Source of the DNA: Macrostomum lignano
Taxonomy: Eukaryota
Assembly: GCA_002269645.1 (NCBI GenBank)
Contig: NIVC01000928.1
Location: forward strand, 248,001-312,000
DNA length: 64,000 nucleotides
Direction of reading: 5' to 3'
The position numbers and the translations under genes are program-made. Below the pieces are notes generated by a model. That model was given only the letters and a program-made list of their open reading frames with translations. It made no database searches and had not been told where the DNA came from. This document shows positions 28,501-55,500 of this stretch, one piece after another; position 1 is the stretch's first letter, and the number at the start of each line of letters is the position of its first letter.

Positions 28501-31500
28501 TAGTAGTTTCGGAGCAGATTTTCAGGTAGATTTGGGGTAGATTCATAGTAGTCTTGGAGCAGATTTTCAGGTAGATTTGGGGTAGATTCATAGTAGTTTT
28601 GGAGCAGATTTTCAGGTAGATTTGGGGTAGATTCATAGTAGTTTCGGAGCAGATTTTCAGGTAGATTTGGGGTAGATTCATAGTAGTTTTGGAGCAGATT
28701 TTCAGGTAGATTTGGGGTAGATTCATAGTAGTATTGGAGCAGATTTTCAGGTAGATTTGGGGTAGATTCATAGTAGTTTTGGAGCAGATTTTCAGGTAGA
28801 TTTGGGGTAGATTCATAGTAGTTTTGGAGCAGATTTGCAGGTAGATTTGGGGTAGATTCATAGTAGTTTTGGAGCAGATTTGCAGGTAGGTTTGGGGTAG
28901 ATTCATAGTTTTGGAGCAGATTTGCAGGTAGATTTGGGGTAGATTCATAGTTTTGGAGCAGATTTGCAGGTAGATTTGGGGTAGATTCATAGTAGTTTTG
29001 GAGCAGATTTTCAGGTAGATTTGGGGTCGATTCAAAGTAGTTTTGGAGCAGATTTTCAGGTAGATTTGGGGTCGATTCAAAGTAGTTTCGGAGCAGACTT
29101 GGGGTGGATTAGTATTTTTGGAAGCAGAATAACCTGCGGATTTAAGGTAGATTTCTGAAGGCTGGACAGATAAACTATGAAGCTCATAGTTTACTCAAAA
29201 GTTATATTAGCTATCGATTGAATTGCACTCACGCTGGCGATCCTGTCAATCAAGTCTTCCACCTGATAGTCCTGACTGACGCCAACCTTCGCCTCCATGC
29301 CGGTCAGCCACTCCATTAACCGGTCGTATCTGCGGGCGCAATATGAATTTAGCAATGGTGTAGCAGCTGTTCCTAACAAATTCCATAATAATCAAACAGC
29401 ATTTCAAAAAAACAATAAACCACAATAAACCTCAATAAACAAACAAACCTGTCGTTAAATTCACGCCACTCATTAACGCCGTGCTGCAGTCGGTCCTCTT
29501 TGAGCAGCAATCGATGATGAAGCTCGTCCCACAGTTTCTCCAGCAGCACAGTTCGCTGATGCAGCAGGTGAATGTCTTCAGCGCTGACCAGCTCCCTCAG
29601 CTGGCGCTCTTTGTCGCGCAGACGGTCCCGAACGCCGCTAGTTGACTCGAATGTTTTCAGATAGTCCTAGAATATTTTTTAGAAAATATATAATAAAGTA
29701 ATGTCCGATTATAACTACTGACAAAATTTTAATTTATAAAAGTAGCGTAATTAGCAATTTTCGTACGAATTTCACACAGCTTACAATTTTTATTATAGAA
29801 TCACTCAGATGGGATAAAAAGCGGTAAAAAATTGAGAAAACTTTCGCATAGGGAAAAACAGAAAAGTAACAAAAATAGAATCTCAGCTAATACTTCGATA
29901 TTCATTGGCTTCCACCTTGCTGATATGCTTGAATCCACATTAGATACGGGGCAATTATCATGGCTGATTTTGTGACAATTCTCAAGCATTGACTAGAGCT
30001 AAGGTGTGTAGTAAAAGTACAACATAAAAATAAAACAAAAGCGATAAAAACAGAGGATAGAATTTTTCCGCGACAGATTCTTTTTGCTTTCATAAGCAGC
30101 GACTTACGTAGAGTTGATCGAGGAATTCCTTCTGTAGAAATGTCAAAAGACATTGGGTTGATAAAGTTTACTTTCGATACATATCGGAAGTTTAAATCAT
30201 CATAAAAAATTCTATCTAAACTGCTTCCCAGCACTTTTAAAAGTTACATGTAAAAGTAGAAATCACAATACGTGTTCAAATCAGTATTAAAAAACTAACA
30301 AATTGAAAAAGATTCGAACCTACAACCTTCCTATCCTACATAGAAATCAACTTTCGATACAAATCGGAGGTATTAGCTACTTGAATAATATTTCAAACTG
30401 CAAATTTTAAAATTCAAGTTATAGGTCTGAAAAGAGATAGATACAGACATTTTTAACTACGTGTATAATAAAGTCCCAAAAATCCCATCGAAGATTCGAA
30501 CTCATGACCTTCCCGCCTCAAAAAACTCACCCGACATCGCTGAGCCTCCGCGTGCAACTCGTCGAACGCTGTCGGGGCCTCGCGCTCAGCAAACAGTCGA
30601 ACCTCGCGCAGCCAGGCAAGACAGTCTCGGACACCTTCGTCCGCTTCCGTCCACAGCTGGCAGATGTTGTCCAGGCGGTTCAGCTGCTCAGTCAGTCCTC
30701 GATTAACCGCCTGCCAGCGAGCGTCCAACTCGGCTGTTCGTGCCTCCAGACCGGCTCGGACAGTCGGCTGTCCGGACATCTCGGCCAGCTGTTTAGCCAT
30801 GTCGCGGCAGCGGGCGTGCGACTCGGCGCGCTCGCCAGCCGAAGCCTGGCACAGCCGGAGCTGCTCGGCCAGGATTCGAACCTGCGGACGGTTGAGACAG
30901 TGTTATTCGAATGTGTTGAGAAAAGAATACTATCGATACATATCGGGATAAAGAATACTATCGATACATTTCGGGATAAATAATACTATCGATACATATC
31001 GGGATAAAGAATACTATCGATACATTTCGGGATAAATAATACTAACGATACATATCGGGAAAATATTACTATCGATACATATCGGGAAAATATTACTATC
31101 GATACATATCGGGAAAATATTACTATCGATACATACTGGGAAAATATTACTATCGATACATACTGGGAAAATATTACTATCGATACATATCGGGAAAATA
31201 ATATCGTTACATATCGGGAAAATATTAATATCGATACATATCGGGATAAATAATACTATCGATACATATCGGGATAAAAAATACTATCAATACATATCGG
31301 GATAAATAATACTAACGATACATATCGGGAAAATATTACTATCGTTACATATCGAGAAAATAATATCGATACATATCGGGATAAATAATACTAACGATAA
31401 ATATCGGGAAAATATTACTATCGATACATATCGGGAAAATAATAACATCGTTACATATCGGGAAAATATTACTCGATAAATACTAGGAAAAAGATACTAT

Positions 31501-37500: not shown

Positions 37501-40500
37501 ATTCTCCCGTTTATTTCAGATCCCCGTTTTCCCCTTATTTCAGATCCCCATTCTCCCCTTATTTCATATCCTCATCATCCCCTTGTTTCAGATCCCCATT
37601 CTTCCCTTATTTCAGATCCCCATTCTTTCCCATTATGTCAGATCTGAATTCTCCCCTTACTTCCAATCCTCATTCTCCCCTTCAGATCCCCACCCTTCCC
37701 TTATTTCAGATCCTCATTCTCCCCTCGATCTCCTTGACCTTCAAAACTCACCCGAATCTCGGCCAGCCTGTCGGCCGCCCCGGCCACCCAGGCATCAAGC
37801 TGAGCCAGCCGGTCGTCCAGCTCAGCCCAGTCCTGAGCGAGGGTCTCCATCTGGTTAGTTCGCTGAGCAGCTGCCAGCTTCACTGCCCGAGCCACCTGGC
37901 CCAAGCGGGCGTGCTGAACGGAGTGCCGGGCCGCCTCGCGCGGGTCTAAGCGACGCCGAGCCTTGATGAAGGAGGTCGATAGTATCTTAGACATGTTTGG
38001 AATCCCTTGATTAGAATTCTTCAAACCAAAATCGCCCCTGATTAGAATCCTTCAAAATCGCCCCTGATTAGAATCCTTCAAAATCGCCCCTGATTAGAAT
38101 CCTTCAAACCGAAATCGCCTGATTAGAATCCTTCAAACCAAAATCGCCCCTGATTAGAATCCTTCAAAATCGCCCCTGATTAGAATCCTTCAAAATCGCC
38201 CCTGATTAGAATCCTTCAAACCAAAATCGCCCCTGATTAGATTCCTTCAAACCAAAATCGCCCCTGATTAGATTCCTTCAAACCAAAATCGCCCCTGATT
38301 AGATTCCTTCAAACCAAAATCGCCCCTGATTAGATTCCTTCAAACCAAAATCGCCCCTGATTAGATTCCTTCAAACCAAAATCGCCCGATTAGAATCCTT
38401 AAAAATCGCCCCTGATTAGAATCCTTCAAAATCGCCCCTGATTAGATTCCTTCAAACCAAAATCGCCCGATTAGAATCCTTAAAAATCGCCCCTGATTAG
38501 AATCCTTAAAAATCGCCCCTGATTAGAATCCTTAAAAATCGCCCCTGATTAGAATCCTTAAAAATCGCCCCTGATTAGAATCCTTCAAACCAAAATCGCC
38601 CGATTAGAATCCTTAAAAATCGCCCCTGATTAGAATCCTTCAAAATCGCCCCTGATTAGAATCCTTCAAACCAAAATCGCCCGATTAGAATCCTTAAAAA
38701 TCGCCCCTGATTAGAATCCTTCAAACCAAAATCGCCCGATTAGAATCCTTAAAAATCGCCCCTGATTAGAATCCTTCAAACCAAAATCGCCCCTGATTAG
38801 AATCCTTCAAACCAAAATCGCCCCTGATTAGAATCCTTCAAACCAAAATCGCCCCTGATTAGAATCCTTCAAACCAAAATTGTCCGATTAGAATCCTTCA
38901 AAATCGCCCTGAGTACTCTCGAAAGCAGTCAATGCCTGACATCTACCTGCTCAAGCGTTGCCTCGTGAGTCTCCAGGCCCTCAAAGAAGGCCCGATGCTG
39001 CTGCTGCTGCCGCCGAACGTCGGCCGAATCAGCGGCAGTCAGGGAAGCCTCGGCCAGCTTGGATTCGGCAGTCTCCAGGTACTCAGCCCAGCTGTGCAGC
39101 ATCTGCTCGTACTGAGCCTGGCTGGTCTGGATTCTGTGCAGCTCCTGGCGCCGCTCAGTCACCCGGACTCGAAGCTCCTCCCAGTCGATGCGCAGGCTCT
39201 GCAGCTCGCCAGATCTGTCCGCTTCGCTGAACTGCGGCGCCCGTTCCAGGATGCGGCCGCCTTTGCGAGTGAGCTCGGCCAGCTTGGCCTCGTACTGCCG
39301 GATGGTGGCCTCCAGCAGCTGCAGGTGTGTGGGATTTGAATGGGGGATTTTACTGGGGAAGTTGAGGCTATGTTAACGAGTCGATTTCGGCAGGTTAATT
39401 TGATAACTTGGAATTGGCAGTTGAAGCGCTGTTGGATGGTAGCTGAGTGGTATCTGAGAGGTAGTTGAGGGTAGCTGAGTAGTATCGGAGGGGTAGTTGA
39501 GTGGTAGTTGAAGGGTAGCTGAGGGGTAGTTGAGGAGTAGTTTAGTGGTAGTTGAAGGGTGCTGAAGGGTAGCTGAGAGATAGTTGAGGAGTAGTTAAGT
39601 GGTAGTTGAAGGGTAGCTGAGGGGTAGTTGAGGAGTAGTTTAGTGGTAGTTGAAGGGTAGCTGAGGGGTAGTTGAGGAGTAGTTTAGTGGTAGTTGAAGG
39701 GTAGCTGAAGGGTAGCTGAGAGATAGTTGAGGAGTAGTTAAGTGGTAGTTGAATGGTAGCTGAGGGGTAGTTGAAGAGTAGTTGAGTAGTAGTTGAATGG
39801 TAGCTGAGGGGTAGCTGAGTGCTAGTTTAGCAGGTATTTGAGAGGTAGCTGAGGAGAAGTTGAAGCATTAGCAAATATTACCGATGGAGGGTTTGGTGAC
39901 AGGCAATACCTAGCTATTTGAAAATACAAAACCGATCCAATCAAGTCGCTCACCTGACTGTCCCGCATCTGCTGCTCAACTGGAGCTGAGGAGTCTCTCG
40001 AAGCTTCGTACTGCCTCCGGCTGGCCTCCAGCTGCGCCCGAACCCGGGCGATCTCGTCTTTGAAGCCGCGCCACTCGCGCTGGCACTCGTTCAGTCGGGC
40101 CTGCCTCCGCTGGGCGCACTGCTCAAGCAGACTCAGCCTACCGTCCAGGTCCGCCACCGACTCCATGGCCAGGTCGGCCGCGCGTTCCCCGCCCGCCAGG
40201 CTGCCCACAACAGCCGGCGTGGCGTCGGACAGACGCTGGGATTGGTCGCAAATTCTTGACAGCTCTTCTAGTAGGATCTGCGAGAGTTTGAGAGTTTTTT
40301 GGGAGAATCGATTCGATTGGTCAGTAGCGGTCATTTGAGGACAACAGTTGGGTTAAAGTCGGTGACTTGTTGTTCAGGACCAATGTCAATGTCTTGGAAC
40401 ACGGGTGCTGAAAATACCATAGACTTAGGTCATCTGAGGACACAAGTGTTAAAAATACCACAGACTTAGGTCATCTGAGGACACGAGTGTTAAACATACC

Positions 40501-43500
40501 ATAGACTTAGGTCATCTGAGGACACAAGTGTTGAACATACCATAGACTTAGGTCATCTGAGGACACAAGTGTTTAAAATACCATAGACTTAGGTCATCTG
40601 AGGACACAAGTGTTAAAAATACCATAGACTTAGGTCATCTGAGGACACAAGTGTTAAAAATACCATAGACTTAGGTCATCTGAGGACACAAGTGTTAAAA
40701 ATACCATAGACTGGGGTCATCTGAGGAAACGAGTGTTAAAAATACCATAGACTGGGGTCATCTGAGGACGAGTGTTAAAAATACCATAGACTTAGGTCAT
40801 CTGAGGACACAAGTGTTAAAAATACCATAGACTGGGGTCATCTGAGGAAACGAGTGTTAATACCATAGACTGGGGTCATCTGAGGACGAGTGTTAAAAAT
40901 ACCATAGACTTAGGTCATCTAGCTGAGGACACAAGTGTTAAAAATACCATAGACTGGGGTCATCTAAGGACGAGTGTTAAAAATACCATAGACTGGGGTC
41001 ATCTGAGGACGAGTGTTAAAAATACCATAGACTGGGGTCATCTGAGGAAACGAGTGTTAATACCATAGACTGGGGTCATCTGAGGACGAGTGTTAAAAAT
41101 ACCATAGACTTAGGTCATCTAGCTGAGGACACAAGTGTTAAAAATACCATAGACTGGGGTCATCTGAGGACGAGTGTTAAAAATACCATAGACTGGGGTC
41201 ATCTGAGGACGAGTGTTAAAAATACCATAGACTGGGGTCATCTGAGGAAACGAGTGTTAAAAATACCAGACTGGAGTCATCTGAGGACGAGTGTTAAAAA
41301 TACCATAGACTGGGGTCATCTGAGGAAACGAGTGTTAAAAATACCAGACTGGAGTCATCTGAGGACGAGTGTTAAAAATACCATAGACTTAGGTCATCTA
41401 GCTGAGGACACAAGTGTTAAAAATACCATAGACTGGGGTCATCTGAGGAAAAGTGTTAATACCATAGACTGGGGTCATCTGAGGACGAGTGTTAAAAATA
41501 CCATAGACTTAGGTCATCTAGCTGAGGACACAAGTGTTAAAAATACCATAGACTGGGGTCATCTGAGGACGAGTGTTAAAAATACCATAGACTGGGGTCA
41601 TCTGAGGACGAGTGTTAAAAATACCATAGACTGGGGTCATCTGAGGACGAGTGTTAAAAATACCATAGACTGGGGTCATCTGAGGACGAGTGTTAAAAAT
41701 ACCATAGACTGGGGTCATCTGAGGAAACGAGTGTTAAAAATACCAGACTGGAGTCATCTGAGGACGAGTGTTAAAAATACCATAGAAGGGGGTCATCTGA
41801 GGATACGACACGAGTGCAGGTAAGAGCCTAGACTGAGGTCATCTGAGGACACGCGTGGACGTATACTGGAAGACGTTTAAGAATGAGAACGAGGCCATAC
41901 CAAAGTTCATTTGAGGACAAAGGGAGAACATACGCAGGCAGAATGGAGGTCATTTAAAAGCTTAATCGTGTCTTGAATACTCATTTCGTGAACAGCATGT
42001 ACAGAAGTTTGCAAAGTGAATTGTGAATAAATGTAGAGTATCGTATCGTAGCTCAAGCGAATTTTAAGCTCTCGGTTAGATGATACAAATATAACCTAGT
42101 TAATTTACCTGAAATCTGTATAAGAATTGAAATGATGACTGCAAGTTGTTGCAAAAATGAAACGCTTGATTAAATGCTCAATATGGTGGACATATTTCAA
42201 AGTTAAACAGTTAAATAAAAGACAATTACTCACATCTAAAGCGGGTCCACTCTCGGTTGAGTCAGTCTGGGAACGGAACAGACGCGATTCAACACCGTCC
42301 AGAGCTGATGAGACGGCAAGCAGAGCAGCCTGATAGCGGCGCTGCTGCTCTTGACGACCCTGTGATTGAATCTGTTGACTCTCGGTGGCTGACTGACGGC
42401 TCAGTCTAGTCATAGCTGCTGACAATTGCGATAGGGCGTTATTGAGCTCAAGGCTGGCTTTAGTTGGCGACTCTGATGGATCTACAGCTTGTAGAGACGC
42501 TGGCCGAGTCTGAAAAAAAACAAATAATAAATAATTGACAATGCTTTCATTACCGGACGAAATGCCTTTAAAAACGTCAAAATTCTGATGACAAGCAGAA
42601 CGAATCCGATTGCGCAAGACATTCAACTTTCAGGTTTCAGCGATGCATAAACAATAATCATATTCATTAGTAAGTTGTAAAGGGACATACATGCGATATA
42701 TAAAGACATTAAAAAACATACTAATATGCACTTTCAGCTTGATTTCCGCGCAATTCGTTGATGCTAAACCTAATTGTACATTGCTAAATTTAATCAAGTT
42801 TTTTACAATCAAAGCTCTACATTTGTACATTTGATTTAATTTTAACACTTCCTCCGACTAGATAAGGCAAGCCTCGATTATAAGGGGGGCCGTAGCTCAG
42901 CGGTAGCGCAGCTGCTCTGGTGTGCCAGCGACCCAGGCTCGATTCCAAGTGCAGTCACATTAATTTGGGGCTGAATTGGAATCTCGGCTTGGCTCTGCTC
43001 GTGCAATTAACGGCCTTGAGAGCCAACCCCCCAAGGCGCAGTGAAGTGTACATGCCTAACGATAATATAAAGTTAGGGCCGCTGTACACTCCTGTGTGAG
43101 TGTGTGCCTGCGTACGTATCCGCACGCTTGTATGCCTGCTCAGGGGAGTCGGCGGAATGGGCAGTAATGCCTCTCGCCGGTTGTGTGCCTATGTCGCTTA
43201 AAGTGCGCCAGGGTGCACACAACCCCCCTGCCTCTAATAAAAAAAAGCCTCGATTATATAGCGCCGGCCGGGGTGTGGGAGAAGATTGAAAAACAGGCAA
43301 TAAAATTCGCGACGGGGTGCCTGATCTTGTTTTTGTCTACTAGGGTTAGGCTAAGGTTGATCGATAGTTCAGCCGCGTCGTCTCTCTATCCCCCATTCCC
43401 CCTCCAATGTATGTACACCGAAGGCACTAGCCACAAATAGTGGAATGTACATTAAATATCAAACCACATCACACTGAATGTCACAGCAGCACAGCATAAT

Positions 43501-46500
43501 CACCGATCACTCAGCTCACTCATGCAGTGCCTTACAATCGGGAAAAATATAAAGAGCCTTCGTTTCTGCTCGTTTTCGAGCAGAAAAGATCATGCAAGAA
43601 AAACATTGGGTTCGATATCACATCAGCAGCAAGCTCGATTCAACTTGGCTAATCTAAGCACACTATAGCTATTCTGCACTTATCAAGACCTAAAGGCATT
43701 GCGTTGTACTTTTCCAAACAAGCTAATCGTTTAGTCAGTAGACAGATCTCGGCGGCAACAGTCGGTAAACGGTGAGCAGACAGTCGGCCGATAAGAACAT
43801 ACAAGTGAGCAGAATGAATGGTAGAAGGACCAAAAGAAGCAGCAGCTGAAAATTGATAGTTAAAAACAACAATAGTTGTTCTTCAGACTCTATACGGTTA
43901 CGTTCGTCATCTCGATTTAGGAAAATGTTTACAGCCGAAAATTCGATACTCAAATGCAACACGGTCGTTCATGCCAAACACGAAACAACACTTACGACAA
44001 GCAATAGGACTGCCAATTTTCTAAGAATATTAGATTTATTGGCATTAGTACTTTCGTCCTAAATGGGAAATTAACAAAATGGTGGACACGAAAATGTTTT
44101 TTTGATGTCGTGTGATTTTCAGGTAGACAAAAGAACCTCTGCATAGCTTTTGCTTACCCCAGAATCAACAGCCTGAACAGTTTCATCGCGCCGCCTTCTA
44201 ATATGCCGAGAAATGTTGCTAAGCTGCTCGTCCAGTTGAGCTTGCAATTCGTCAGAATCGTCGTACACTGGCTCGTCAGAGAGTTCCAGACGTTCGAAAT
44301 CGTTGCCGAGACTCTGTATCAGACTGTGATGATCTTGGATGCCGCTTTGAAGACGCTGCAAATTTAGATCGATTTCAATGTCAAATATTGATATTGATTC
44401 GATATCGCTTGCTTCTATCGTAGAAGCTTCCTGTATAGCATTGTTATTGTTGGCGTCGTGTTCCATAAATACTGGGAGCAGGTTTAATACGGTGAACACA
44501 CAGGGAGATTGATCCCTTGGCTTTGAATAACGGGTCAACGGGAGGCCTGCGGACGACCCGACTTTTAACCGCGTGTTTGCAGCTAAGAAGCGCGGCAGGG
44601 GGTCTTCTAACCACCCCCAAAACTTGCGCCAAGTTGGATTTCCAACGTACAATGAAGTGGGGGAATGGGGGAGCTAGCTGGGTAGAAGTTTTTGGAGCTA
44701 ATGTACATTGGGCAATAAAATAGGTTGCGTACATTCAAATCATCCGACTTGACCAATCCCTTTAAAAATGGTTGGGCTGGGTGGGTCTGGCGCAGTTTGT
44801 GATTTTTTATTTAAACATTATTTAACAGCCTAAACAGTTTTTTACACAGCTATAAAAGTCTACAAGTGTACAGTGAATGTACACTATTAAAACGGCTTGA
44901 GTTTAAACCAGCCAAGTACATGAGCGATGATAAATAATCTTGTACAGTTTTCTATTGTAGTTTTGCACTTTATTGGTGACGCAAAAGAACTTACTAATAG
45001 ATTAAGCTTGAATTTTAATTTCTCAAATTTCAAACCTTTCAGAGAACTTTCAGGCAAGCAGTAGACGATTTTGAATTACAACAACAACAAAATAAATTGT
45101 CAGCCAGCCAGGCGTGAGGCGTGAATGACAAGAATAGAGCATCAAAAACATACATAACAGCACTCACCATAGCCAAGCCCTCCTCAGCGGCTCGTCTTTG
45201 TCGGCCAATCTCGGCGGCCTCCGCGTGCTGCTGTTGTCGCCGAACTCGGTACTCGGTGCTGTCAACCGATTCGGCATCCGCTGCAGCATCTGCTCCAGCT
45301 GGCGCGGCAGGTGGCGCTCGTTCTGCAGCTTTGGCCGCTTCCCTTAGCGCCACCTGACGCTCAATACAGTCATTCTTCAACGCCTCCATCGCTTCTTGCA
45401 ACGCGTGCAACCTGTTCTCAATTGGCCGGCGCTCGTCCGGCGACTCAAACTCGCACAGCTGATTATAGTGCACCTGGGCATCGCTGAGCTCCTGCAGTCG
45501 GCTATTGAGCTCCGAGTTGATCGACCGACAGGCTTCAATGGCTGCGTCTGGATCAGCGGCACTGCTCACAGACTGCGCTAGTCGAGTCTCAGCCTGGCTA
45601 GTCCAGGCTTCAAGTCGGCCAGTGTCATCCAACAGGCGCGTCCGAGCATTCTGATGACGCTCCCGATCGCGCGCCGTCTGCAGAATCTTTTTCTTCTTCT
45701 GTTCGGCCAGATCTTTCAAGGATTTCTCTTTTTTCTGCAGCGCAGTCAAGCTCTTCTGCATGGCCTCTTCGTCGTCTTTGCTGGACGACTCGCACAGCTC
45801 GAGACCGAGTCGCACCAGCGAATCAATCTCCTGACTGATCACCTCGACTTCGATCATCAGATTCTCGTGCTCAGTTGTGCACTCATCTAACGAAGCGGCG
45901 TTGCGCGGATCGAGACTGTCCAGACTCTGCTTAGTAGAGTCCATCCTCATGGCCACCGTGCGCAGACGCTCGTTGAACTCTTCTTGACGCGTTAGCGTGC
46001 GCTTCAGTTCCGCTTCTTTGGCGCGTAACTGGGTGGCAGAGAATTAAACTGATGTCTGGAGTTAACTGATTACAACTTTATCAGCGAGAGGCGGAGTGGG
46101 GTGGGCTTTTTTGTCAATGTACATTGGCTGCAGCGACTGGAGCGGGGAAAGAGGGTCCCTGACTGGATGTACAGAGAGGGTCCCCGACTGGATGTACAGA
46201 GAGGGTCTCCGGCTGGATGTACAGAGGGTCCCCGACTGGATGTACAGAGAGGGCCCCCGGCTGAATGTACAGAGGGTCCCCGACTGGATGTACAGAGAGG
46301 GTCCCCGGCTGAATGTACAGAGAGGGTCCCCGGCTGAATGTACAGAGAGGGTCCCCGGCTGAATGTACATATCACGGCTTAAGCGGGGGGAGAGAGGGTC
46401 CCCGACTGAATGTAGAGAGAGGGTCCCCGACTGGATGTACAGAGAGGGTCCCCGGCTGAATGTACATATCATGGCTTAAGCGGGGCAGAGAGGATCCCCG

Positions 46501-49500
46501 ACTGAATGTACAGAGAGGGTCCCCGGCTGAATGTACATATCACGGCTTAAGCGGGGCAGAGAGGATCCCCGACTGAATGTACAGAGAGGGTCCCCGGCTG
46601 AATGTACATATCACGGCTTAAGCGGGAGAGAGGATCCTCGACTGAATGTACAGAGAGGGTCCCTGGCTGAATATACCAGTACAGAGAGGGTCCCCGGCTG
46701 AATGTACACTTGTTAAAAGTTCAAGAAATGCAGGTAAAAATGCTGGAAGATGTTGAAAGTCAAAAAAGGTTCAGCAGGATAGTGGACTGGATTGAAAAAT
46801 TTATACACTCGTAGGAAAAGTAGGTTCACACTCCTCCAAGGCTCGTAAATGAGCTTAATAATAATACCGATAAAATATGTACGAAATAATTACCATAATA
46901 CTTGTCACAGGTTTTTATGGAATCCAAATGAAGATGGCGATGGCGAGATTTCAAATTAGAAAATCAAAAATTAGGAGTAATGAAGCGAAGAGGCGGAATA
47001 CTTCAAGTATGAATGAACGAATTAATTCTTAAATGCAAGGCGCTCTATAAAGAAAGCAGAACCCTCATTGATATTAATAAGCTTTATAGCAGTCATACAT
47101 CGTGAACATTGCAGCCTGCACAACAAGTGTACCAGAATCTGTGCTAAATTTACAAGTCAGGCTAATGGTGTGTTTATTCCAACTGCCGGAGAGAGACAGT
47201 TGAAATCGGTTGTGGCGCGTGCAGACAGCCACAAATTGTGGGTAGGATGTAGAGAGCGGTTGCCCCGAGGTTTTGCGCAGCTAGACGTGTAGAGTCAGTC
47301 GAATTCAGGCATCAACAGTAAACTAAGGACAGGAAGTGAGATATAGTTATGAATGGTCTGCGAGCCGGTATTGAACTCACCTTGCCGTGCATGCTGGTCA
47401 CCCGCTCATCGATCTGCTCCTCGGTTAGAGCTCTGGCCTCCTCAGCTGGCACAGCATCGATTGTGGTGCTGCTGGCGGCCATTTCGGACGACCTCTCAGC
47501 TGTAGCTGACGAGTCTGACCTGACGGGCCGGTCCTGCGTATTCCAGAACACAACAACCTCGCCGTCGGCAAGAGACTGCGTAGCGCCTTGCAGGCTGTAG
47601 GTCTCGCCCTCGCCAAGGTACATCGCGTCGCCAGCTCGAAGCAGTCGCGACCGGAAGTTCACAGTGACAACGGTCTCCCGGTCGAGCGGAACCGCCATGG
47701 CCCGACGACACCGATGGAAGTCCAGCGGCACCAGCAGCCTCGGCTGTTGGCCAGTCGGTCTGGCAGACTGCTCGGCGCTGTTCACGAAGCTGACCCGATC
47801 GGCCGGCTGCAGGCGCACCGGCTCGCCTGGCTGCACAGTCACTGGCAATTCGTTCACTAGCACAGTCTCGTACGGGTCCACCCACACAACTTGCTGCCTC
47901 TGCTGCTCGGCCAGCGAGTACACGCAGATGACCTGATCGGCCGGGCTGTAGCACAGGCTGGACCCAACTTTGGCCTCCTGCATCGGCCCGATCAGGTGCA
48001 GCTCATTGGCGACTACCGGAGTCGCTTCTCCGTCGCGCACGATCGGAGTTTCGGCGTCCACACGACACCAGGATCGGCGAAGACGGCTCCAGCTGCTGGC
48101 GGCCCCGGGCCTCGTCGCTGCCACTGCGGTCGCGGCGCAGGAAGCGAATCTCGTTTGGCCTGGCCGAGGGCTGCCGTTCGCCGTCCAGCTGGATGGAGTC
48201 TCCGGGTTTCAGCATCGAGAGTGTCGCCGAATCATCGTCAGGCGGTTGATCGTTGATGAGCACTGCTTGGCGATCGGGATTGACGGTCAGGATCGAGACA
48301 GTCTCGTGGCTGATGCTGAGGGCATCGTCGGGCGTGCAGAATCTCTGGGCCCGGGTGGCGCGGGTGCAGCAGAAGACTGCGACGGCTGAGGCGGCGGCGG
48401 CATCGCTTCGAGACGATGGAACGCAGCGTCGAGTTCGTTGGCGCCGCGGCTGGAGACAGCGAGATGCGGTCTGACCGGCTCCTCGTCTGGTGCCGCTGGC
48501 GACTGCTACGGTGGTTTTTTTAAAGATGAGAGACGGATTTTAAAACAAATTCCACAGCTTCCGGCTTTGAATATAAGCACATTGGGTTTGCTCAAGCACA
48601 GAGGTTCGCCTTCTGCTTCTGGTCTTTAACCTACTCGTACTGCTCGCTGGGTTGGTCTGAAACTATTCGCTTCTACCTCTGTCTGTCTCTCTCTCTCTAT
48701 GCGCACAGTCGGGGGCATTTATTAATTCTTGGCTTATTTATTGTTCATTCTCAAATTCGTCTGCATTATTGTCCGCAGCTCCTAACGAAAAACCCATGCA
48801 GTTTTAATTTATTCTACTACTCGACCGCATCTTCATTCAGTCGGTTTGAAGTAAAAAAAGCTGCTATTTGAGTCAAGGCGTGTCTCACGTTCTATTTGCA
48901 GTGATGAGGTGGTGGCGGTCTGCTGGACAGAGACGCACACGAGCCTTTAGAGAAATAGAACACCCCAGGGTGTGCAGTTTGCGCACTATGTCGGCACCGA
49001 ATACAGAGTACAATAAACAACAGATCTTACATCAATTAGAAATTCCATACAGACTACCGAACTAAGTAGTAAGTAAAGAAGATAAAGCTCGTAGTTACCT
49101 GAGCGGCGCTGCGAGCCTCTAGCTGGGCCAGTTCGGCAGCCAGTCTCTCGTACTCGGGGTCCGACTCGGACAAGCCGCCAGTTGTTCGCAGCGTCTCCAA
49201 TTCGTAGCGCAGAGTTTTCACGTTGCGCGCGAGTTCGAGCGACTCACGCTCGGCGGCTGCTGCGGCCACGCCTGCCCGGCTGGAGGCGCCGCTGCCGCGA
49301 CCGCGGCCGGCCTTCAACGCCGCGAGATCGTCGACGTCGGCCGCTGGGTACTGGGACTTTTTAGGAGACTCGCTAGCACTTCCTGCTGATACTGACTCGG
49401 ACTCTGATGCCTCCTTAGCTGGCGACCCTTCCACACTTCTTACTGGAGAGGCCTCGAAACTCTGAGATTCTTTCGTAGGCGACGCGTCCGCGCTAGTAAG

Positions 49501-52500
49501 TGCCCTCGGTGGCGAAGCTTCGGCACTGACAAAGCTTGTGGCGGGTGAAGCTTCGAAACTTGGCGGCGCATCTCCTGTTTGTTGCGCTTCGATTGTTAAA
49601 GCGTCTCTGATCGGCGCTGCTTCAGCACTCGGTACCTCTCTTGTCGGCGATGCTTCAGCACTCGGTACCTCTCTTGTCGGCGATGCTTCAGCACTCGGTA
49701 CCTCTCTTGTCGGTGACACTTCAGCACTCAGTACCTCTCTTGTCGGTGACACTTCAGCACTCAGTACCTCTCTTGTCGGCGATGCTTCAGCACTCGGTAC
49801 CTCTCTTGTCGGCGATGCTTCAGCACTCAGTACCTCTCTTGTCGGTGACACTTCAGCACTCAGTACCTCTCTTGTCGGCGATGCTTCAGCACTCGGTACC
49901 TCTCTTGTCGGCGATGCTTCAGCACTCGGTACCTCTCTTGTCGGCGATGCTTCAGCACTCAGTACCTCTCTTGTCGGCGATGCTTCAGCACTCGGTAACT
50001 CTCTTATCGGCGATGCTTCAGCACTCGGTACCTCTCTTGTCGGCGATGCTTTAGCACTCAGTACCTCTCTTGTCGGCGATGCTTCAGCACTCGGTACCTC
50101 TCTTGTCGGCGATGCTTCAGCACTCGGTACCTCTCTTGTCGGCGATGCTTCAGCACTCAGTACCTCTCTTGTCGGCGATGCTTCAGCACTCGGTAACTCT
50201 CTTATCGGCGATGCTTCAGCACTCGGTACCTCTCTTGTCGGCGATGCTTCAGCACTCAGTACCTCTCTTGTCGGCGATGCTTCAGCACTCGGTACCTCTC
50301 TTGTCGGCGATGCTTCAGCACTCGGTACCTCTCTTGTCGGCGATGCTTCAGCACTCAGTACCTCTCTTGTCGGTGACACTTCAGCACTCGGTACCTCTCT
50401 TGTCGGCGATGCTTCAGCACTCAGTACCTCTCTTGTCGGTGACACTTCAGCACTCGGTACCTCTCTTGTCGGCGATGCTTCAGCACTCAGTACCTCTCTT
50501 GTCGGCGATGCTTCAGCACTCGGTACCTCTCTTGTCGGCGATGCTTCAGCACTCAGTACCTCTCTTGTCGGCGATGCTTCAGCACTCAGTACCTCTCTTG
50601 TCGGCGATGCTTCAGCACTCGGTACCTCTTTTTTCGGTGATGCTTCAGCACTCGGTACCTCTCTTGTCGGTGATATTTCAGCACTCAGTACCTCTCTTGT
50701 CAAAGAAACATCAGCACTCGGTACCTCTCTTGTCAAAGAAACATCAGCACTCGGTACCTCTCTTGTCGGCGATGCTTCAGCACTCAGTACCTCTCTTGTC
50801 GGTGACACTTCAGCACTCAGTACCTCTCTTGTCGGTGACACTTCAGCACTCAGTACCTCTCTTGTCGGTGACACTTCAGCACTCAGTACCTCTCTTGTCG
50901 GCGATGCTTCAGCACTCGGTACCTCTCTTGTCGGTGACACTTCAGCACTCAGTACCTCTCTTGTCGGTGATGCTTCAGCACTCGGTACCTCTCTTGTCGG
51001 CGATGCTTCAGCACTCGGTACCTCTCTTGTCAAAGAAACATCAGCACTCGGTACCTCTCTTGTCGGCGATGCTTCAGCACTCAGTACCTCTCTTGTCGGC
51101 GATGCTTCAGCACTCAGTACCTCTCTTGTCGGTGACACTTCAGCACTCGGTACCTCTCTTGTCGGCGATGCTTCAGCACTCGGTACCTCTCTTGTCGGTG
51201 ACACTTCAGCACTCAGTACCTCTCTTGTCGGTGATGCTTCAGCACTCGGTACCTCTCTTGTCGGCGATGCTTCAGCACTCGGTACCTCTCTTGTCAAAGA
51301 AACATCAGCACTCGGTACCTCTCTTGTCGGCGATGCTTCAGCACTCAGTACCTCTCTTGTCGGCGATGCTTCAGCACTCGGTACCTCTCTTGTCGGCGAT
51401 GCTTCAGCACTCAGTACCTCTCTTGTCGGCGATGCTTCAGCACTCAGTACCTCTCTTGTCGGTGACACTTCAGCACTCAGTACCTCTCTTGTCGGCGATG
51501 CTTCAGCACTCAGTACCTCTCTTGTCGGCGATGCTTCAGCACTCAGTACCTCTCTTGTCGGCGATGCTTCAGCACTCGGTACCTCTCTTGTCGGTGACAC
51601 TTCAGCACTCAGTACCTCTCTTGTCGGCGATGCTTCAGCACTCGGTACCTCTCTTGTCGGTGACACTTCAGCACTCAGTACCTCTCTTGTCGGTGATGCT
51701 TCAGCACTCGGTACCTCTCTTGTCGGCGATGCTTCAGCACTCGGTACCTCTCTTGTCAAAGAAACATCAGCACTCGGTACCTCTCTTGTCGGCGATGCTT
51801 CAGCACTCAGTACCTCTCTTGTCGGCGATGCTTCAGCACTCGGTACCTCTCTTGTCGGCGATGCTTCAGCACTCGGTACCTCTCTTGTCGGCGATGCTTC
51901 AGCACTCGGTACCTCTCTTGTCGGCGATGCTTCAGCACTCAGTACCTCTCTTGTCGGCGATGCTTCAGCACTCGGTAACTCTCTTATCGGCGATGCTTCA
52001 GCACTCGGTACCTCTCTTGTCGGCGATGCTTCAGCACTCAGTACCTCTCTTGTCGGCGATGCTTCAGCACTCGGTACCTCTCTTGTCGGCGATGCTTCAG
52101 CACTCAGTACCTCTCTTGTCGGCGATGCTTCAGCACTCGGTACCTCTCTTGGCGGTGACACTTCAGCAGTCGGTACCTCTCTTGTCGGTGACACTTCAGC
52201 ACTCGGTACCTCTCTTCTCGGTGATGCTTCAACACTCGGTACCTCTCTTGTCGGCGATGCTTCAGCACTCAGTACCTCTCTTGTCGGCGATGCTTCAGCA
52301 CTCGGTACCTCTCTTGGCGGTGACACTTCAGCAGTCGGTACCTCTCTTGGCGGTGACACTTCAGCAGTCGGTACCTCTCTTGTCGGTGACACTTCAGCAC
52401 TCGGTACCTCTCTTCTCGGTGATGCTTCAACACTCGGTACATCTCTTGTCAAAGAAACATCAGCACTCGGTACTTCTCTTGCTGGTGATGCTTCAGCACT

Positions 52501-55500
52501 CGGTACCTCTCTTGTCGGTGATGCCTCAGCACTCGGAACACTTCTGGCTGGAGAAGCTTCAGCACTCGGTACATCTTTTGAAGGCGAGGCTTCAGCACTC
52601 GGTACATCTCTTGAAGGCGATGCTTCAGCTGTAAAAGTAGATGCAGCTGATAAAAACTCTCCACTGGAAGCCGATTTGCTTCGTGCTGTTGAGGCTTCAA
52701 AACTAGTAGCATCCTTGATTTGCGAATATCTAGCGGTTGTCACTTCATCACTGGGGCCGCTCGTCGCTGGTGACGCTTCAGCATATGGGCCTTCCACTGT
52801 AGGCTCACTCGCAGCTGCTGAAAACTCAACACTTGCAACGCTTTTAGCTGGTGAAGATTCGACACTGCGTATGTCTCCAGCAGATGGCGCTTCGGTGCGT
52901 GGATTATCACCAGTTGTCGAGGCTTCAGCTGTTGGAACTGACCTCTTCAGCGACAGTTCAATGCTTGAAGACGCTTCACCAATATCGCCTGTGGCGCTGG
53001 GCAGACTTCTGACTGGAGACCCTTCAACACTTTTGGCTGGAGAGGTGTCAACACTATGGACGGGTGACGTCTCAAAACTGGGTACAGGTCGACTACTGAA
53101 CTCTTCGGTCACAACCTCATCAGCAGGTCTCACCTCAGCACTGCTTGAACTGTCGGCTGGCGCTTGCTGCTCACCGATACTGCCTTGTGCAAGCAAGCGC
53201 TTTGCTGCCGCTCTTCTTGCCAGAAGTTCGTCAGCGCTAGGAAAAGTGGACATGGAATGCAAAGAGGCATCCTTTGACGGTGACGATTCAGCACTTTGAA
53301 CTGGAGATGCTTCGGCACTCTGAACTGGAAGAGCTTCAGCTTTCTTTGACGGTGACGATTCAGCACTTTGAACTGGAGATGCTTCGGCGCTCTGAACTGG
53401 AGATGCTTCGGCACTATGAGCTGGAAGAGCTTCAGCTTTCTTTGACGGTGACGATTCAGCACTCTGAGCTGGAGATGCCTCAGGACGTTGTAATGAAAAA
53501 GCATCTGTATCCTGCATTTTCCCGAAAGTCTCCGCGCTTTTTAGCTGAGAATCTTTGGCCAAGAAATTAGAAGTTGAACTTTCAATGCTTTCAGTAAAAA
53601 CAGTTGTAGTTGTCTGAATTCTTGTTTTGGTTTGCTGCATAGTGTTCTTTTCAGCACTCGGAGCACTTCTGGCTGGAGACGCTTCTGCTTCGGCACTTGG
53701 GACACTTCTGGCTGGAGACGCTTCAGTGCTCTGTCCCTCTTCAAATACTACTGCTTCAGCACTCGGAACACTTCTGGCTGGAGACGCTTCAGTGCTCTGT
53801 CCCTCTTCAATGACTACTGCTTCAGCACTCGGAACACTTCTGGCTGGAGACGCTTCAGTGCTCTGTCCCTCTTCAATGACTACTGCTTCAGCACTCGGAA
53901 CACTTCTGGCTGGAGACGCTTCAGTGCTCTGTCCCTCTTCAATGACTACTGCTTCAGCACTCGGAACACTTCTGGCTGGAGACGCTTCAGCACTCGGAAC
54001 ACTTCTGGCTGGAGACGCTTCAGCACTCGGAACACTTCTGGCTGGAGACGCTTCAGTGCTCTGTCCCTCTTCAATGACCACTGCTTCAGCACTCGGAACA
54101 CTTCTGGCTGGAGGCGCTTCAACACTCGGAACACTTCTGGCTGGAGATGCTTCAGCACTCGGAACACTTCTGGCTGGAGACGCTTCAGTGCTCTGTCCCT
54201 CTTCAATGACCACTGCTTCAGCACTCGGGACACTTCTGGCTGGAGACGCTTCAGCACTCGGAACACTTCTGGCTGGAGATGCTTCAGCACTCGGAACACT
54301 TCTGGCTGGAGACGCTTCAGCACTCGGAACACTTCTGGCTGGAGACGCTTCAGTGCTCTGTCCCTCTTCAATGACCACTGCTTCAGCACTCGGAACACTT
54401 CTGGCTGGAGGCGCTTCAACACTCGGAACACTTCTGGCTGGAGATGCTTCAGTGCTCTGTCCCTCTTCAATGACCACTGCTTCAGCACTCGGAACACTTC
54501 TGGCTGGAGGCGCTTCAACACTCGGAACACTTCTGGCTCGAGACGCTTCAGCACTCGGAACACTTCTGGCTGGAGACGCTTCAGCACTCGGAACACTTCT
54601 GGCTGGAGATGCTTCAGTGCTCTGTCCCTCTTCAATGACCACTGCTTCAGCACTCGGAACACTTCTGGCTGGAGGCGCTTCAGCACTCGGAACACTTCTG
54701 GCTGGAGACGCCTCAGCACTCGGAACACTTCTGGCTGGAGACGCGCTGGGAGCACTTGGGCCGGCCTCCGAGCTCAGGGCCTGGGGCCTTTGCTTGGCAG
54801 TAGCAGCAGTCTCAGAAACTTCATAGGGCAACTCTTCAAGACTGGGCAGTCGTTTCTTAGAGCGAGGCGAGCCGTCGCTTTCTTGGGAAGCAGCAGAGTG
54901 CGGTCTAGCTGGGTGAACTCGGACAGTCTGCGCCTCCTCAACCAGCACTGTCGGTTTCACCGAGCGAGTCGGCGATCCAGACGACGGTTGCGGCGGTCGA
55001 AGGTCGGCGGCATCAAACCGAGAGGACGCAACCACCGGAGACGTTCTCTGACGCACTGAAATTGCTGATGGCGTCGTCCTCGGACTCGACGGCGAGAACT
55101 GGCGCGGCGTCTTACGAGGACTCTTGGGACTCTCGCGACGCCGTTCCAGAGTGAGCCGGACCTCGATGTTGGGCGGCTCGTCCAAACTGTCATCGCCAGC
55201 ACCGAGGCCGAGCTGCGGCGTTTCAATCGTCAGCTGGGGCTTCCGCCTGATGGCGGCGATCTCATCCTGCTGCGGCTCCTCTGGGGCGTTCGCGATGGCC
55301 GCTGCTGACTCCACCTCGGTCTCCAGGTCGGCCAGCTGGGACTCCAATCGGCCAAGTCGATCTCGCAGTTCGGCGGGCACCGAGCCGCCGCTGCCCCGGC
55401 CGGCCGGATAGCGAACGCTGACCTCCTCCACGATCTCCGTGACGCGACGGCGTTGAACCAGAACCTCCTGGCGGGCCAGCGCGCATCGAGCGGCTAGCGC

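What the first reader, a model, noticed from the sequence alone, without database searches (positions are those of the whole stretch)
47381..48420. Three degenerate FHA-like beta modules embedded in a nesprin
Seen: the exon right after the repeat exon is beta-rich, not helical. It has three similar motifs: AVLINDQPP..LKPGDSIQLDG, ETVLVNELPV..PVRLQPADRVSFV and ETVVTVNFRS.LLRAGDAMYLGEG. Known: FHA domains end in xxVNG...L..GD.I.hG, and the second module (AKVG..DQVICV..VVWVDPYETVLVNE) follows the kinesin-3/afadin FHA layout. The canonical GR and SxxH phospho-binding residues are not evident. Inference: a nesprin with tandem FHA-fold domains is a domain architecture I do not recognise.
Basis: partly seen in the sequence, partly recalled or inferred. 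Interest (0 to 1): 0.75.

Follow-up and report, generated by a model that had tools for sequence, protein, structure and literature searches.

The report
Strand-rich insert in flatworm nesprin-like gene
The exon is a real, conserved, non-helical piece of a giant nesprin-like spectrin-repeat gene of the flatworm Macrostomum lignano, built from three diverged copies of a short hairpin motif, but no test here shows that it forms FHA domains.

Summary
The exon (48505..47381, minus strand) follows the giant 11-aa-repeat exon. It is poor in helix formers and carries the three quoted motifs. Profile comparison shows the motifs are related: M1 to M2 P=3.6e-5, M2 to M3 P=1.2e-4. A 35%-identical relative on a metagenome contig, with its own splice sites, shows it is constrained coding sequence.

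As assembled, the exon has two frame breaks, near 48365-48371 and at 48102/48103. The 97%-identical M. lignano protein A0A1I8IHH1 reads through both.

The FHA interpretation is not supported:
- Pfam, NCBIfam and a PDB profile search found nothing.
- Two AlphaFold models had pLDDT 38-40, and Foldseek found no FHA.
- My own FHA profiles match only a 22-27-residue stretch (VLVNELPV..LQPADRVSF) of the central module, P about 1e-4.
- The part that should hold GR and SxxH scores no better than shuffles, and its register changes with the profile.
- Modules 1 and 3 are too short for an FHA domain. Module 1 matches the unrelated ThiS fold better than FHA.

The one positive is that UniProt's automatic name for A0A1I8IHH1 is "FHA domain-containing protein".

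Best reading: a lineage-restricted strand-rich region of unknown fold built from a generic VN...GD hairpin unit. Interest is modest.

The parts
47381..48505 (-). Whole exon of the nesprin-like gene that follows the giant repeat exon. It has about 375 codons once the two frame breaks are bridged.
   Evidence: Splice acceptor and donor read directly. Junctions match P0001.
48365..48505 (-). N-terminal Pro/Ala/Ser-rich linker (QSPAAPDEEPVRPH..MPPPPQPSQSSAA), frame f1. The first frame break lies at its 3' end (48365-48371).
   Evidence: P0001 has 7 Pro where the window has 4, and it reads on into frame f0.
48102..48332 (-). Module 1 region, frame f0 (PDDALSISHETVSILTVNPDRQAVLINDQPP..LKPGDSIQLDGERQPSARP..SGSDEARG). 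The repeat unit is 48266-48156. The second frame break is at 48102/48103.
   Evidence: Its similarity to unit 2 shows f0 is the coding frame here.
47786..48076 (-).
   Evidence: hhalign score 29.3, P=1.2e-4, 81 columns, 0/200 shuffles. Larger or subset profiles shrink the match to 22-27 residues, and the N-terminal half is not significant.
47756..47866 (-). Repeat unit 2 (TVLVNELPVTVQPGEPVRLQPADRVSFVNSAEQSARP). This is the only part with an FHA-favouring profile match.
   Evidence: Its score against ThiS is only 16.4.
47540..47743 (-). Module 3 (PRLLVPLDFHRCRRAMAVPLDRETVVTVNFRSRLLRAGDAMYLGEGETYSLQGATQSLADGEVVVFWN). The repeat unit is 47677-47591. This is the best-conserved and best-modelled part.
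   Evidence: Invariant LVPLDF, VTV, LRxGD, LGxGxT and GAT against P0002. pLDDT is 55-69 here only.
47549..47863 (-). Stretch conserved with the distant relative P0002 (39% identity over 122 columns, E=7e-17).
47381..47539 (-). Ser/Thr/Ala-rich tail and a short helix (EEARALTEEQIDERVTSMHGK) leading back into the spectrin-repeat rod.
49099..55431 (-). Preceding giant repeat exon, part of a 2125-aa open frame. It holds 91.7 copies of a 33-bp unit at 49604-52629 that encode SPTREV[P/L]SAEA. The 5' limit is where the open reading frame ends; the exon's true 5' end was not mapped.

Best explanation
This is a genuine coding exon of a giant nesprin-like spectrin-repeat gene of Macrostomum lignano, or a very close copy of that gene. 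It encodes about 270 residues of strand-rich, non-spectrin sequence. This lies between the huge disordered SPTREV repeat array and the C-terminal spectrin rod.

The region arose by internal duplication of a unit of about 40 residues: a strand ending in V-x-V-N, a variable loop, then L-x-x-G-D-h-x-h. Three diverged copies remain. That unit is a generic beta-hairpin element of the 'GD box' type, which occurs in FHA, ThiS/MoaD and many other strand-rich folds. Its presence therefore does not identify the fold. Only units 2 and 3, with the LVPLDF strand between them, are conserved in the one distant relative known. They most likely form a compact all-beta domain of unknown fold.

I infer, but have not shown, that it serves as a phospho-independent protein-binding module on the cytoplasmic part of the nesprin.

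The two frame breaks in this window (1 nt and 2 nt short, in G/C runs) are most likely consensus errors of a long-read assembly. Less likely, they are lesions in one copy of a polyploid genome.
For: Gene identity:
- Spectrin (E=4.4e-7) and Spectrin_SYNE1 (E=5.6e-9, above the cut-off) on neighbouring exons.
- P0001 maps exon by exon onto 49638..37749 at 85-100% identity for all but the last segment (51%).
- P0001 is UniRef100_A0A1I8IHH1 of M. lignano.

Coding and constraint:
- P0002 is 35% identical (E=9e-13 in the 1.84-billion-protein search). It comes from an unrelated metagenome contig whose exon is bounded by its own ..ttttccag| acceptor and |gtgagg donor.

Repeat nature: hhalign M1-M2 P=3.6e-5, M2-M3 P=1.2e-4, 0/100 shuffles each.

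Generic motif:
- M1 scores 20.7 (P=0.0017, 41 columns) against a ThiS profile, versus 16.5-17.4 against FHA.
- M3 scores 14.2 against ThiS, versus 16-19 against FHA.

Lineage restriction:
- Only 2 proteins with E<=0.001 among 1.84 billion representatives.
- Nothing in JGI metagenomes.
- No Pfam, NCBIfam or PDB family.

Non-helical: composition and essentially strand-only models.

Frame breaks: located. Both published M. lignano assemblies rest on PacBio data (PMC5730564), and the species is a hidden polyploid (PMC10468722 and PMC10733133).
Against: - UniProt's automatic name for P0001 is 'FHA domain-containing protein'. Some curated signature, probably PROSITE or SMART (my inference), therefore fired somewhere in that protein. 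I could not see where.
- Unit 2 matches the FHA C-terminal strands clearly better (29-30, P about 1e-4) than ThiS does (14.8) and better than unit 2 matches ThiS (16.4).
- With an 8-sequence FHA profile the match stretched over 81 columns.
- The fold is unknown because both models are unreliable.
- The proposed binding function is pure inference.
- Whether the frame breaks are errors cannot be decided without reads.
Confidence: 0.6

Rival explanations
1. The central module (about 48076-47756) is one genuine but highly degenerate FHA domain. It has lost the phosphothreonine-binding Gly-Arg and Ser-x-x-His residues, as some phospho-independent FHA domains have. Modules 1 and 3 are partial duplicates of its C-terminal strands.
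For: - hhalign against the 8-sequence FHA profile: score 29.3, P=1.2e-4, 81 columns, 0/200 shuffles; the reversed query scores 9.7.
- Against the larger profiles: P=5.5e-5 to 1.4e-4.
- The UniProt name of the near-identical protein.
- This is the only module with enough residues ahead of the motif for a full domain.
Against: - True FHA domains left out of the same profile score 35-105.
- With kinesin-3-only or larger profiles, only 22-27 residues align. Against the non-kinesin FHAs the match is not significant, P=0.16.
- The N-terminal half and the GR-to-VNG core are no better than shuffles (2/200 to 119/200 as good). They align in three different registers: LIGP=VGR, VRDG=VGRE, AKVG=TRVG.
- Part of the 81-column score came from a chance RSWC match to RNF8.
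- Pfam is silent, and unfiltered hmmsearch gives about 0 bits.
- P0001 lacks 13 residues (VRDGEATPVVANE) exactly where strands 1-2 would lie.
Confidence: 0.22
2. One reading: three tandem FHA-fold domains of about 90 residues each.
For: - The motif xxVN...L..GD.h.h recurs three times.
- Each copy gives a weak hit to the last strands of FHA: M1 16.5-17.4, M3 16-19.
Against: - Module 1 is preceded by only about 20 non-proline-rich residues, and module 3 by about 35. That is too few for the 55-60 residues an FHA domain needs ahead of VNG (direct reading).
- The hits cover 10-36 columns with P=0.01-0.04.
- ThiS, an unrelated fold, matches M1 better.
- There is no FHA hit by any library or by Foldseek.
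Confidence: 0.03
3. The region has no stable fold. It would be a mostly disordered linker with a few strand-prone patches, and the motif recurrence reflects recent local duplication without structural meaning.
For: - pLDDT is below 50 for 225 of 275 residues even with the three-sequence alignment.
- About 32% of residues are P/G/N/D/S.
- Module 1 and the Arg/Ser-rich spacer are not covered by the distant relative.
Against: - Units 2 and 3 keep 39% identity across a divergence at which the neighbouring spectrin exon found no database hit in the word-indexed search.
- Invariant hydrophobic strands (LVPLDF, VTV, L-G-G-T) are conserved, as expected of a folded core.
- Low pLDDT is the expected outcome for an alignment of three sequences.
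Confidence: 0.12
4. The two frame breaks are real, and this window carries a decaying duplicate of the gene in the polyploid M. lignano genome. This concerns the state of this copy only and is compatible with any of the readings above.
For: - There are two breaks within 270 nt, plus several in-frame indels relative to P0001: 4 Pro against 7, a 39-nt segment, and two extra codons.
- M. lignano is a recent polyploid with duplicated subgenomes (PMC10733133 and PMC10468722).
Against: - All other exons mapped from P0001 are open and, apart from the last segment (51%), 85-100% identical.
- Both breaks sit in short G/C runs, where long-read consensus errors are typical.
- The frame-f0 segment still looks like coding sequence related to unit 2.
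Confidence: 0.25

Closest known systems
FHA domain (Pfam PF00498, PROSITE PS50006; SMAD/FHA fold), in particular the kinesin-3/afadin type
   Same: Unit 2 resembles the strands VNG-x-x-V...L-x-x-G-D/N-x-I (P about 1e-4). The region is all-beta in character. The near-identical UniProt entry is auto-named FHA domain-containing.
   Different: - No family-level profile hit.
- No Gly-Arg and no Ser-x-x-His in any register.
- No NG.
- The N-terminal half is not alignable.
- Modules 1 and 3 are too short.
- No structural support.
Nesprin / SYNE / Msp300 / ANC-1 giant KASH proteins
   Same: A long rod of spectrin repeats, including a Spectrin_SYNE1 match above Pfam's cut-off. A very large repetitive exon. 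A possible tail-anchored last exon.
   Different: - I know of no nesprin described with a strand-rich domain in the rod. A full-text search for nesprin plus 'FHA domain' gave only two papers, neither reporting one.
- The Pfam KASH model does not match the candidate tail.
- CH domains, if any, lie outside the window.
GD box supersecondary element (Alva et al. 2009, Protein Sci 18:1961; title seen in the reference lists, content from my own knowledge)
   Same: A strand, a tight turn with Gly-Asp, then a strand, written h-x-x-G-D-x-h-x-h: LKPGDSIQL, LRAGDAMYL, and LRCGDAVDL / LRPGDCLQL in P0002.
   Different: It is a motif shared by many unrelated folds, not a family. The paper itself could not be read here. 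Unit 2 of the window has PAD instead of GD.
ThiS/MoaD beta-grasp proteins (used as a specificity control)
   Same: The stretch A-V-x-h-N-x-x-h...h-x-x-G-D-x-h-x-h aligns with module 1 over 41 columns, score 20.7, P=0.0017, 0/100 shuffles.
   Different: No C-terminal Gly-Gly, no N-terminal beta-alpha part, and no family-level hit. I do not propose membership.
SH3 domains inserted in spectrin-family rods (alpha-spectrin, plakins)
   Same: From my own knowledge, this is a precedent for a small beta domain embedded among spectrin repeats.
   Different: No SH3 family hit in Pfam. The resemblance to the ALYDY..L.F.KGD pattern is by eye only and was not tested further.

Membership tests
FHA domain | Significant match to an FHA family profile (Pfam FHA, FHA_2, Yop-YscD_cpl or equivalent) | tested here: not met
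   - hmmscan against Pfam at E<=10 gave no FHA family, on the window pieces, P0001 and P0002.
- PDB profile search: no FHA.
FHA domain | Beta-sandwich of about 100-120 residues and 11 strands | tested here: inconclusive
   AlphaFold2 mean pLDDT was 37.8 (single sequence) and 39.5 (3 sequences). Foldseek against PDB found nothing with E below 0.4 and no FHA/SMAD entry among the 50 matches printed (of 57 with E <= 10). The models are too poor to exclude the fold.
FHA domain | Phosphothreonine-binding residues: Gly-Arg (loop 3-4), Ser-x-x-His (loop 4-5), Asn-Gly (loop 6-7) | tested here: not met
   None is present in any of the three registers produced. Candidates are LIGP, AKVG and VRDG instead of GR, there is no SxxH, and VNE or VNF stands in place of VNG.
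FHA domain | Profile-profile similarity over most of the domain, robust to the choice of reference set | tested here: not met
   - 81 columns with the 8-sequence profile.
- 22-27 residues with kinesin-3-only, 18-sequence and 117-sequence profiles, and not significant against non-kinesin FHAs.
- The N-terminal half and core are no better than shuffles.
- Leave-one-out true FHAs score 35-105, against 29 here.
FHA domain | C-terminal strands VNG..h......L..GD.I.hG | tested here: met
   Unit 2: score 29-30, P=5.5e-5 to 1.4e-4. Units 1 and 3 are weak, P=0.01-0.04. The feature is not exclusive to FHA: the ThiS control scores 20.7 on unit 1.
FHA domain | Enough sequence for a full domain in each of the three modules | tested here: not met
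   By direct reading, about 20 residues (module 1) and about 35 residues (module 3) precede the VN motif. In KIF1A, Ki-67, RNF8, CHK2 and Rad53, 64 or more aligned residues precede it.
Nesprin (KASH-domain spectrin-repeat protein) | Spectrin repeats of the nesprin type | tested here: met
   - Spectrin_SYNE1: E=5.6e-9, 36.4 bits against a cut-off of 35, at 32011-31538.
- Spectrin: E=4.4e-7 at 45956-45039.
- Spectrin in P0001: E=8.6e-9.
Nesprin (KASH-domain spectrin-repeat protein) | C-terminal KASH domain (transmembrane helix plus a luminal tail of about 30 residues) | tested here: inconclusive
   The open frame 22572-22357(-) ends in a hydrophobic helix plus 29 residues and a stop (..SQGLPY*). 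This has the KASH layout, but there is no Pfam KASH hit at E<=1. Its splicing to this gene is not shown.
Nesprin (KASH-domain spectrin-repeat protein) | N-terminal paired calponin-homology domains (giant isoforms) | not testable with these tools
   The 5' end of the gene lies beyond coordinate 64000 of the window.
ThiS/MoaD beta-grasp | Family profile match plus a C-terminal Gly-Gly | tested here: not met
   Only a motif-level hhalign match. There is no GG end and no Pfam ThiS hit. It was used as a control only.

The most novel reading that the evidence does not exclude
Units 2 and 3, with or without the central stretch, form a beta domain so far seen only in M. lignano and one unplaced metagenome contig. 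It is either a new fold family or an FHA relative diverged beyond sequence recognition. It has been inserted into a nesprin directly after about 90 copies of SPTREV. Those repeats are Ser-Pro/Thr-rich and would give pT-x-x-V sites if phosphorylated, so the domain could read out the phosphorylation state of its own repeat array in cis or between molecules.
Probability: 0.12. Interest if true: 0.55.

Novelty: new variant of a known kind. Interest (0 to 1): 0.27.

Why it matters
Nesprins are described as rods of spectrin repeats with CH and KASH ends. A conserved all-beta insert would be an unusual docking site on the cytoplasmic face of the nuclear-envelope bridge, in a flatworm that is a transgenic regeneration model. 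That makes it testable.

As it stands the finding is mainly a caution. The 'xxVN...L..GD.I.hG' signature is a generic hairpin shared with unrelated folds, and it should not be read as FHA without the GR/SxxH half or a structure. The automatic UniProt name 'FHA domain-containing protein' for A0A1I8IHH1 is not reproduced by Pfam or by the profiles built here.

The report also flags two frame-breaking indels in this assembly that would truncate any gene model.

Tried and rejected
- **Pfam** on the two window pieces, P0001 and P0002 at E<=10: nothing relevant. **NCBIfam**: nothing.
- **Word-indexed homologue search** with the 248-aa piece and with the neighbouring spectrin exon: no hits. It even missed the 97%-identical P0001, so that index is incomplete for this organism.
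- **Exhaustive phmmer**: only P0001 and P0002. P0001 has no contig on record. P0002 sits on a 964-bp contig with no context.
- **JGI metagenome scan** with LVPLDF and GD patterns: 599 pattern matches, none a relative.
- **PDB profile search**: one chance protease hit, E=0.45.
- **AlphaFold2**, single sequence and three-sequence alignment: pLDDT 37.8 and 39.5. **Foldseek**: no usable match.
- **Whole-FHA alignment of the central module**: I first took this as positive, then rejected it as fragile. It did not survive subset or larger profiles or tests of the N-terminal half and core.
- **hhalign self-comparison mode**: returned nothing. I replaced it with pairwise sub-alignments.
- **Introns as an explanation of the frame changes**: rejected. 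The alignments to P0001 abut or overlap (48365/48371 and 48102/48103), which leaves no room.
- **SH3-like reading**: considered by eye only. There is no Pfam SH3 hit, and I did not pursue it.
- **KASH test on the candidate tail exon**: no Pfam hit.
- **GD-box paper**: could not be opened.
Full report
**What is there**

The window carries a very long gene on the minus strand whose exons encode spectrin repeats.
- Pfam finds Spectrin (E=4.4e-7) at 45956-45039.
- It finds Spectrin_SYNE1, 'Nesprin-1 spectrin repeats' (E=5.6e-9, 36.4 bits against a cut-off of 35), at 32011-31538.
- Several other exons give weaker spectrin hits.

A 2125-codon open frame at 55431-49054 holds 91.7 copies of a 33-bp unit encoding SPTREV[P/L]SAEA. 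It ends at a phase-0 donor after 49099.

The exon under study follows it.
- Acceptor: ..ccaccgtag|CAG at 48505.
- Donor: AAG|GTGAGT after 47381.

**Origin**

An exhaustive phmmer search of 1.84 billion representative proteins with the 248-residue piece 48124-47381 found two relatives.

P0001 (E=6e-132, 97% identity) is UniRef100_A0A1I8IHH1 of the free-living flatworm Macrostomum lignano. The source names it 'FHA domain-containing protein'. It maps exon by exon onto the window from 49638 to 37749, so the window is that locus or a near-identical copy of it.

P0002 (E=9e-13, 35% identity) comes from a 964-bp contig of an ENA metagenome. There the homologous exon has its own polypyrimidine-CAG acceptor, just before AVQVN, and its own GTGAGG donor. 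An independent, spliced, in-frame relative at 39% identity over 122 columns (E=7e-17 by tblastn) shows that 47863-47549 is constrained coding sequence.

Nothing else was found:
- the word-indexed protein search gave nothing;
- a scan of JGI metagenomes gave nothing.

The region appears restricted to M. lignano and the unplaced organism behind that contig.

**Frame breaks**

In this assembly the exon reads in frame f1 from 48505 to about 48365, in f0 from about 48371 to 48102, and in f1 again from 48103 to 47381.
- P0001 reads straight through both places.
- At the second place the two readings overlap by 2 nt inside GGCCCGGGGCCGCC, so the window is 2 nt short.
- At the first place it is 1 nt short by net count, among several in-frame differences (and direct reading).
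- Introns cannot explain this, because the aligned pieces abut.
- Frame f0 is the true coding frame of module 1, since its product is significantly similar to unit 2.

Both published M. lignano assemblies rest on PacBio data (PMC5730564), and both breaks lie in G/C runs. I therefore favour consensus errors. The species is also a recent polyploid (PMC10468722 and PMC10733133), so a decaying duplicate remains possible at about 0.25.

**Strand-rich, with three related units**

The exon has 25% V/I/Y/F/W/T/C and 42% A/L/E/Q/K/M/R. Three spectrin exons have 15-16% and 59-63%. Both AlphaFold models are of low confidence. They contain essentially only short strands until the terminal helix EEARALTEEQIDERV.

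Profile-profile comparison of sub-alignments gives:

| Pair | Score | P | Columns | Shuffles as good |
|---|---|---|---|---|
| Unit 1 (AVLINDQPP..LKPGDSIQLDGERQPSARP) vs unit 2 (TVLVNELPV..LQPADRVSFVNSAEQSARP) | 26.6 | 3.6e-5 | 37 | 0/100 |
| Unit 2 vs unit 3 | 25.2 | 1.2e-4 | 38 | 0/100 |
| Unit 1 vs unit 3 | 17.2 | 0.0074 | 9 (LxxGDxxxL only) | 0/100 |

**Is it FHA? Library searches and structure**

- Pfam gives no FHA-type family at E<=10 on the window pieces, on P0001 or on P0002.
- NCBIfam gives nothing.
- A profile of the three sequences finds no FHA protein among PDB chains.
- Mean pLDDT is 37.8 and 39.5. Only module 3 reaches 55-69.
- Foldseek against PDB finds nothing below E=0.4 and no FHA/SMAD entry among the 50 matches printed.

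**Is it FHA? Profiles built here**

To imitate HHpred I built FHA reference alignments from sequences verified against PDB chains: KIF1A, KIF1B, KIF1C, a KIF13-type kinesin, Ki-67, RNF8, CHK2 and Rad53 FHA1. I later enlarged them with 109 FHA domains retrieved by a profile search.

With the 8-sequence profile the central module scored 29.3 (P=1.2e-4, 81 columns, 0/200 shuffles, reversed query 9.7). This looked promising but did not hold up.
- Against kinesin-3 FHAs alone, only 23 columns aligned (VNELPV..RVSFVNS).
- Against the non-kinesin FHAs the match was not significant, P=0.16.
- With the larger profiles, only 22 columns aligned (VLVNELPVTVQPGEPVRLQPADRVSF, P=5.5e-5 to 1.4e-4).
- The N-terminal half alone, and the GR-to-VNG core alone, scored no better than shuffles in most settings.
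- They aligned in three mutually exclusive registers: LIGP, VRDG or AKVG opposite the Gly-Arg.
- Part of the 81-column score was a chance RSWC match to RNF8.
- True FHA domains left out of the profile score 35-105.
- hmmsearch with all filters off gives about 0 bits.
- No register supplies Gly-Arg, Ser-x-x-His or Asn-Gly.
- P0001 lacks 13 residues (VRDGEATPVVANE, 48040-48002) exactly where FHA strands 1-2 would be.

Modules 1 and 3 give only matches of 10-36 columns to the last FHA strands (P=0.01-0.04). They have too few residues ahead of the motif for a full domain.

**Specificity control**

The same V-x-h-N...h-x-x-G-D-x-h-x-h pattern occurs in ThiS/MoaD beta-grasp proteins, an unrelated fold. 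I built a four-sequence ThiS profile from PDB-verified sequences and compared it with the FHA results.

| Query | Score vs ThiS profile | Score vs FHA profiles |
|---|---|---|
| Module 1 | 20.7 (P=0.0017, 41 columns, 0/100 shuffles) | 16.5-17.4 |
| Module 3 | 14.2 | 16-19 |
| Unit 2 | 16.4 | 29-30 |
| ThiS profile itself | n/a | 14.8 |

It corresponds to what has been called the GD box (title seen in the reference lists; content from my own knowledge). Only unit 2 has an FHA-leaning flavour.

**Verdict on the interpretation**

Its power was limited by a three-sequence alignment.

The one independent point in its favour is the automatic UniProt name of A0A1I8IHH1. That name implies some signature fired somewhere in the protein. 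I infer PROSITE or SMART, since Pfam does not match. I could not locate it.

My estimates:
- about 0.22 that the central module is a single, degenerate, phospho-independent FHA domain;
- about 0.03 that there are three FHA domains;
- about 0.6 that this is a lineage-restricted all-beta region of unknown fold made of duplicated VN...GD hairpin units;
- about 0.12 that it is largely unfolded.

**Mechanism (inferred)**

The region lies between a disordered repeat array of more than 2000 residues and the C-terminal spectrin rod. Only units 2 and 3, with the LVPLDF strand between them, are conserved. The most economical reading is a compact beta domain that serves as a protein-docking site on the cytoplasmic part of the nesprin. 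It would not depend on phosphothreonine recognition, because the FHA binding residues are missing.

A more speculative reading is that it recognises the neighbouring SPTREV repeats when they are phosphorylated. That is given as the novel case.

**Comparison and novelty**

The gene meets the spectrin-repeat criterion for a nesprin. A KASH-like tail-anchored last exon may exist at 22572-22357, but the Pfam KASH model does not match it. A full-text search found no report of an FHA or other beta domain inside a nesprin.

The protein is already in UniProt with an FHA-based automatic name, so the idea is not new as an annotation. It is uncharacterised and, on the evidence here, unconfirmed. I rate it a new variant of a known kind, namely a nesprin-like protein with a lineage-specific beta insert. 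Interest is modest.

Noticed in passing
window 49604-52629 (and 53650-54744), minus-strand ORF 55431-49054: A 33-bp tandem array of 91.7 copies at 91% match encodes SPTREV[P/L]SAEA inside a 2125-codon open frame. Upstream of it lie 66/165/264-bp arrays encoding ASPARSVPSAEA-type repeats. The Ser-Pro/Thr-rich units look like a giant disordered, potentially phosphorylated spacer.
   Followed up: partly
window 48365-48371 and 48102-48103: Two frame-breaking indels (net 1 nt and 2 nt short) relative to the M. lignano protein A0A1I8IHH1. Both lie in G/C runs. Any gene model made on this assembly would be truncated or would need artificial introns.
   Followed up: partly
window 48040-48002: A 39-nt in-frame segment (VRDGEATPVVANE) is present here but absent from P0001. 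It is flanked by similar ACTCCG(A/G)T words. It could be an indel between gene copies or an artefact of the P0001 gene model.
   Followed up: no
window 22572-22357 (-): An open frame ends in a hydrophobic helix (LLSLPIEAFFLLLCGIGYLL) plus 29 residues and a stop (..SQGLPY*). This is a tail-anchor with KASH-like layout, 1.1 kb downstream of the last spectrin-like exon, but the Pfam KASH model does not match it.
   Followed up: partly
window 20351-20010 (-): An open frame with a clear WSC domain (Pfam PF01822, E=1.2e-17). It is presumably part of a separate downstream gene.
   Followed up: no
window 18240-18040, 11745-11515, 10909-10769 (-): Short open frames with EF-hand-like loops (DQDGE.., [25 protein letters not shown]). 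Only a weak Pfam EF-hand_1 hit (E=0.008). They may be exons of a calcium-binding protein gene.
   Followed up: no
window 45956-45039 (-) versus P0001 residues 544-792: P0001 lacks about 39 residues (..HQNARTRLLDDTGRLEAWTSQAETRLAQSVSSAADPDAA..) that are open and spectrin-like in the window. The UniProt gene model is therefore itself imperfect.
   Followed up: no
window 1548-5660, 7874-9542, 14900-18130, 18650-19400, 28010-29080: Long minisatellite arrays produce large spurious open frames on both strands (for example [20 protein letters not shown] and MNLPQIYLKICSKTT units). This fits the highly repetitive M. lignano genome.
   Followed up: no
L001 (ENA ERZ23499590 scaffold_48700), 322-885: The only distant relative of the exon sits on a 964-bp eukaryotic contig in a metagenome assembly. 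It has AT-rich introns and a GC-rich exon, like Macrostomum. An intron interrupts unit 2 there, whereas the window has none at that position.
   Followed up: partly
tool behaviour: The word-indexed homologue search missed a 97%-identical protein that the exhaustive search found and that the cluster look-up says is in the collection. Negative results from that index for this organism are therefore weak.
   Followed up: no
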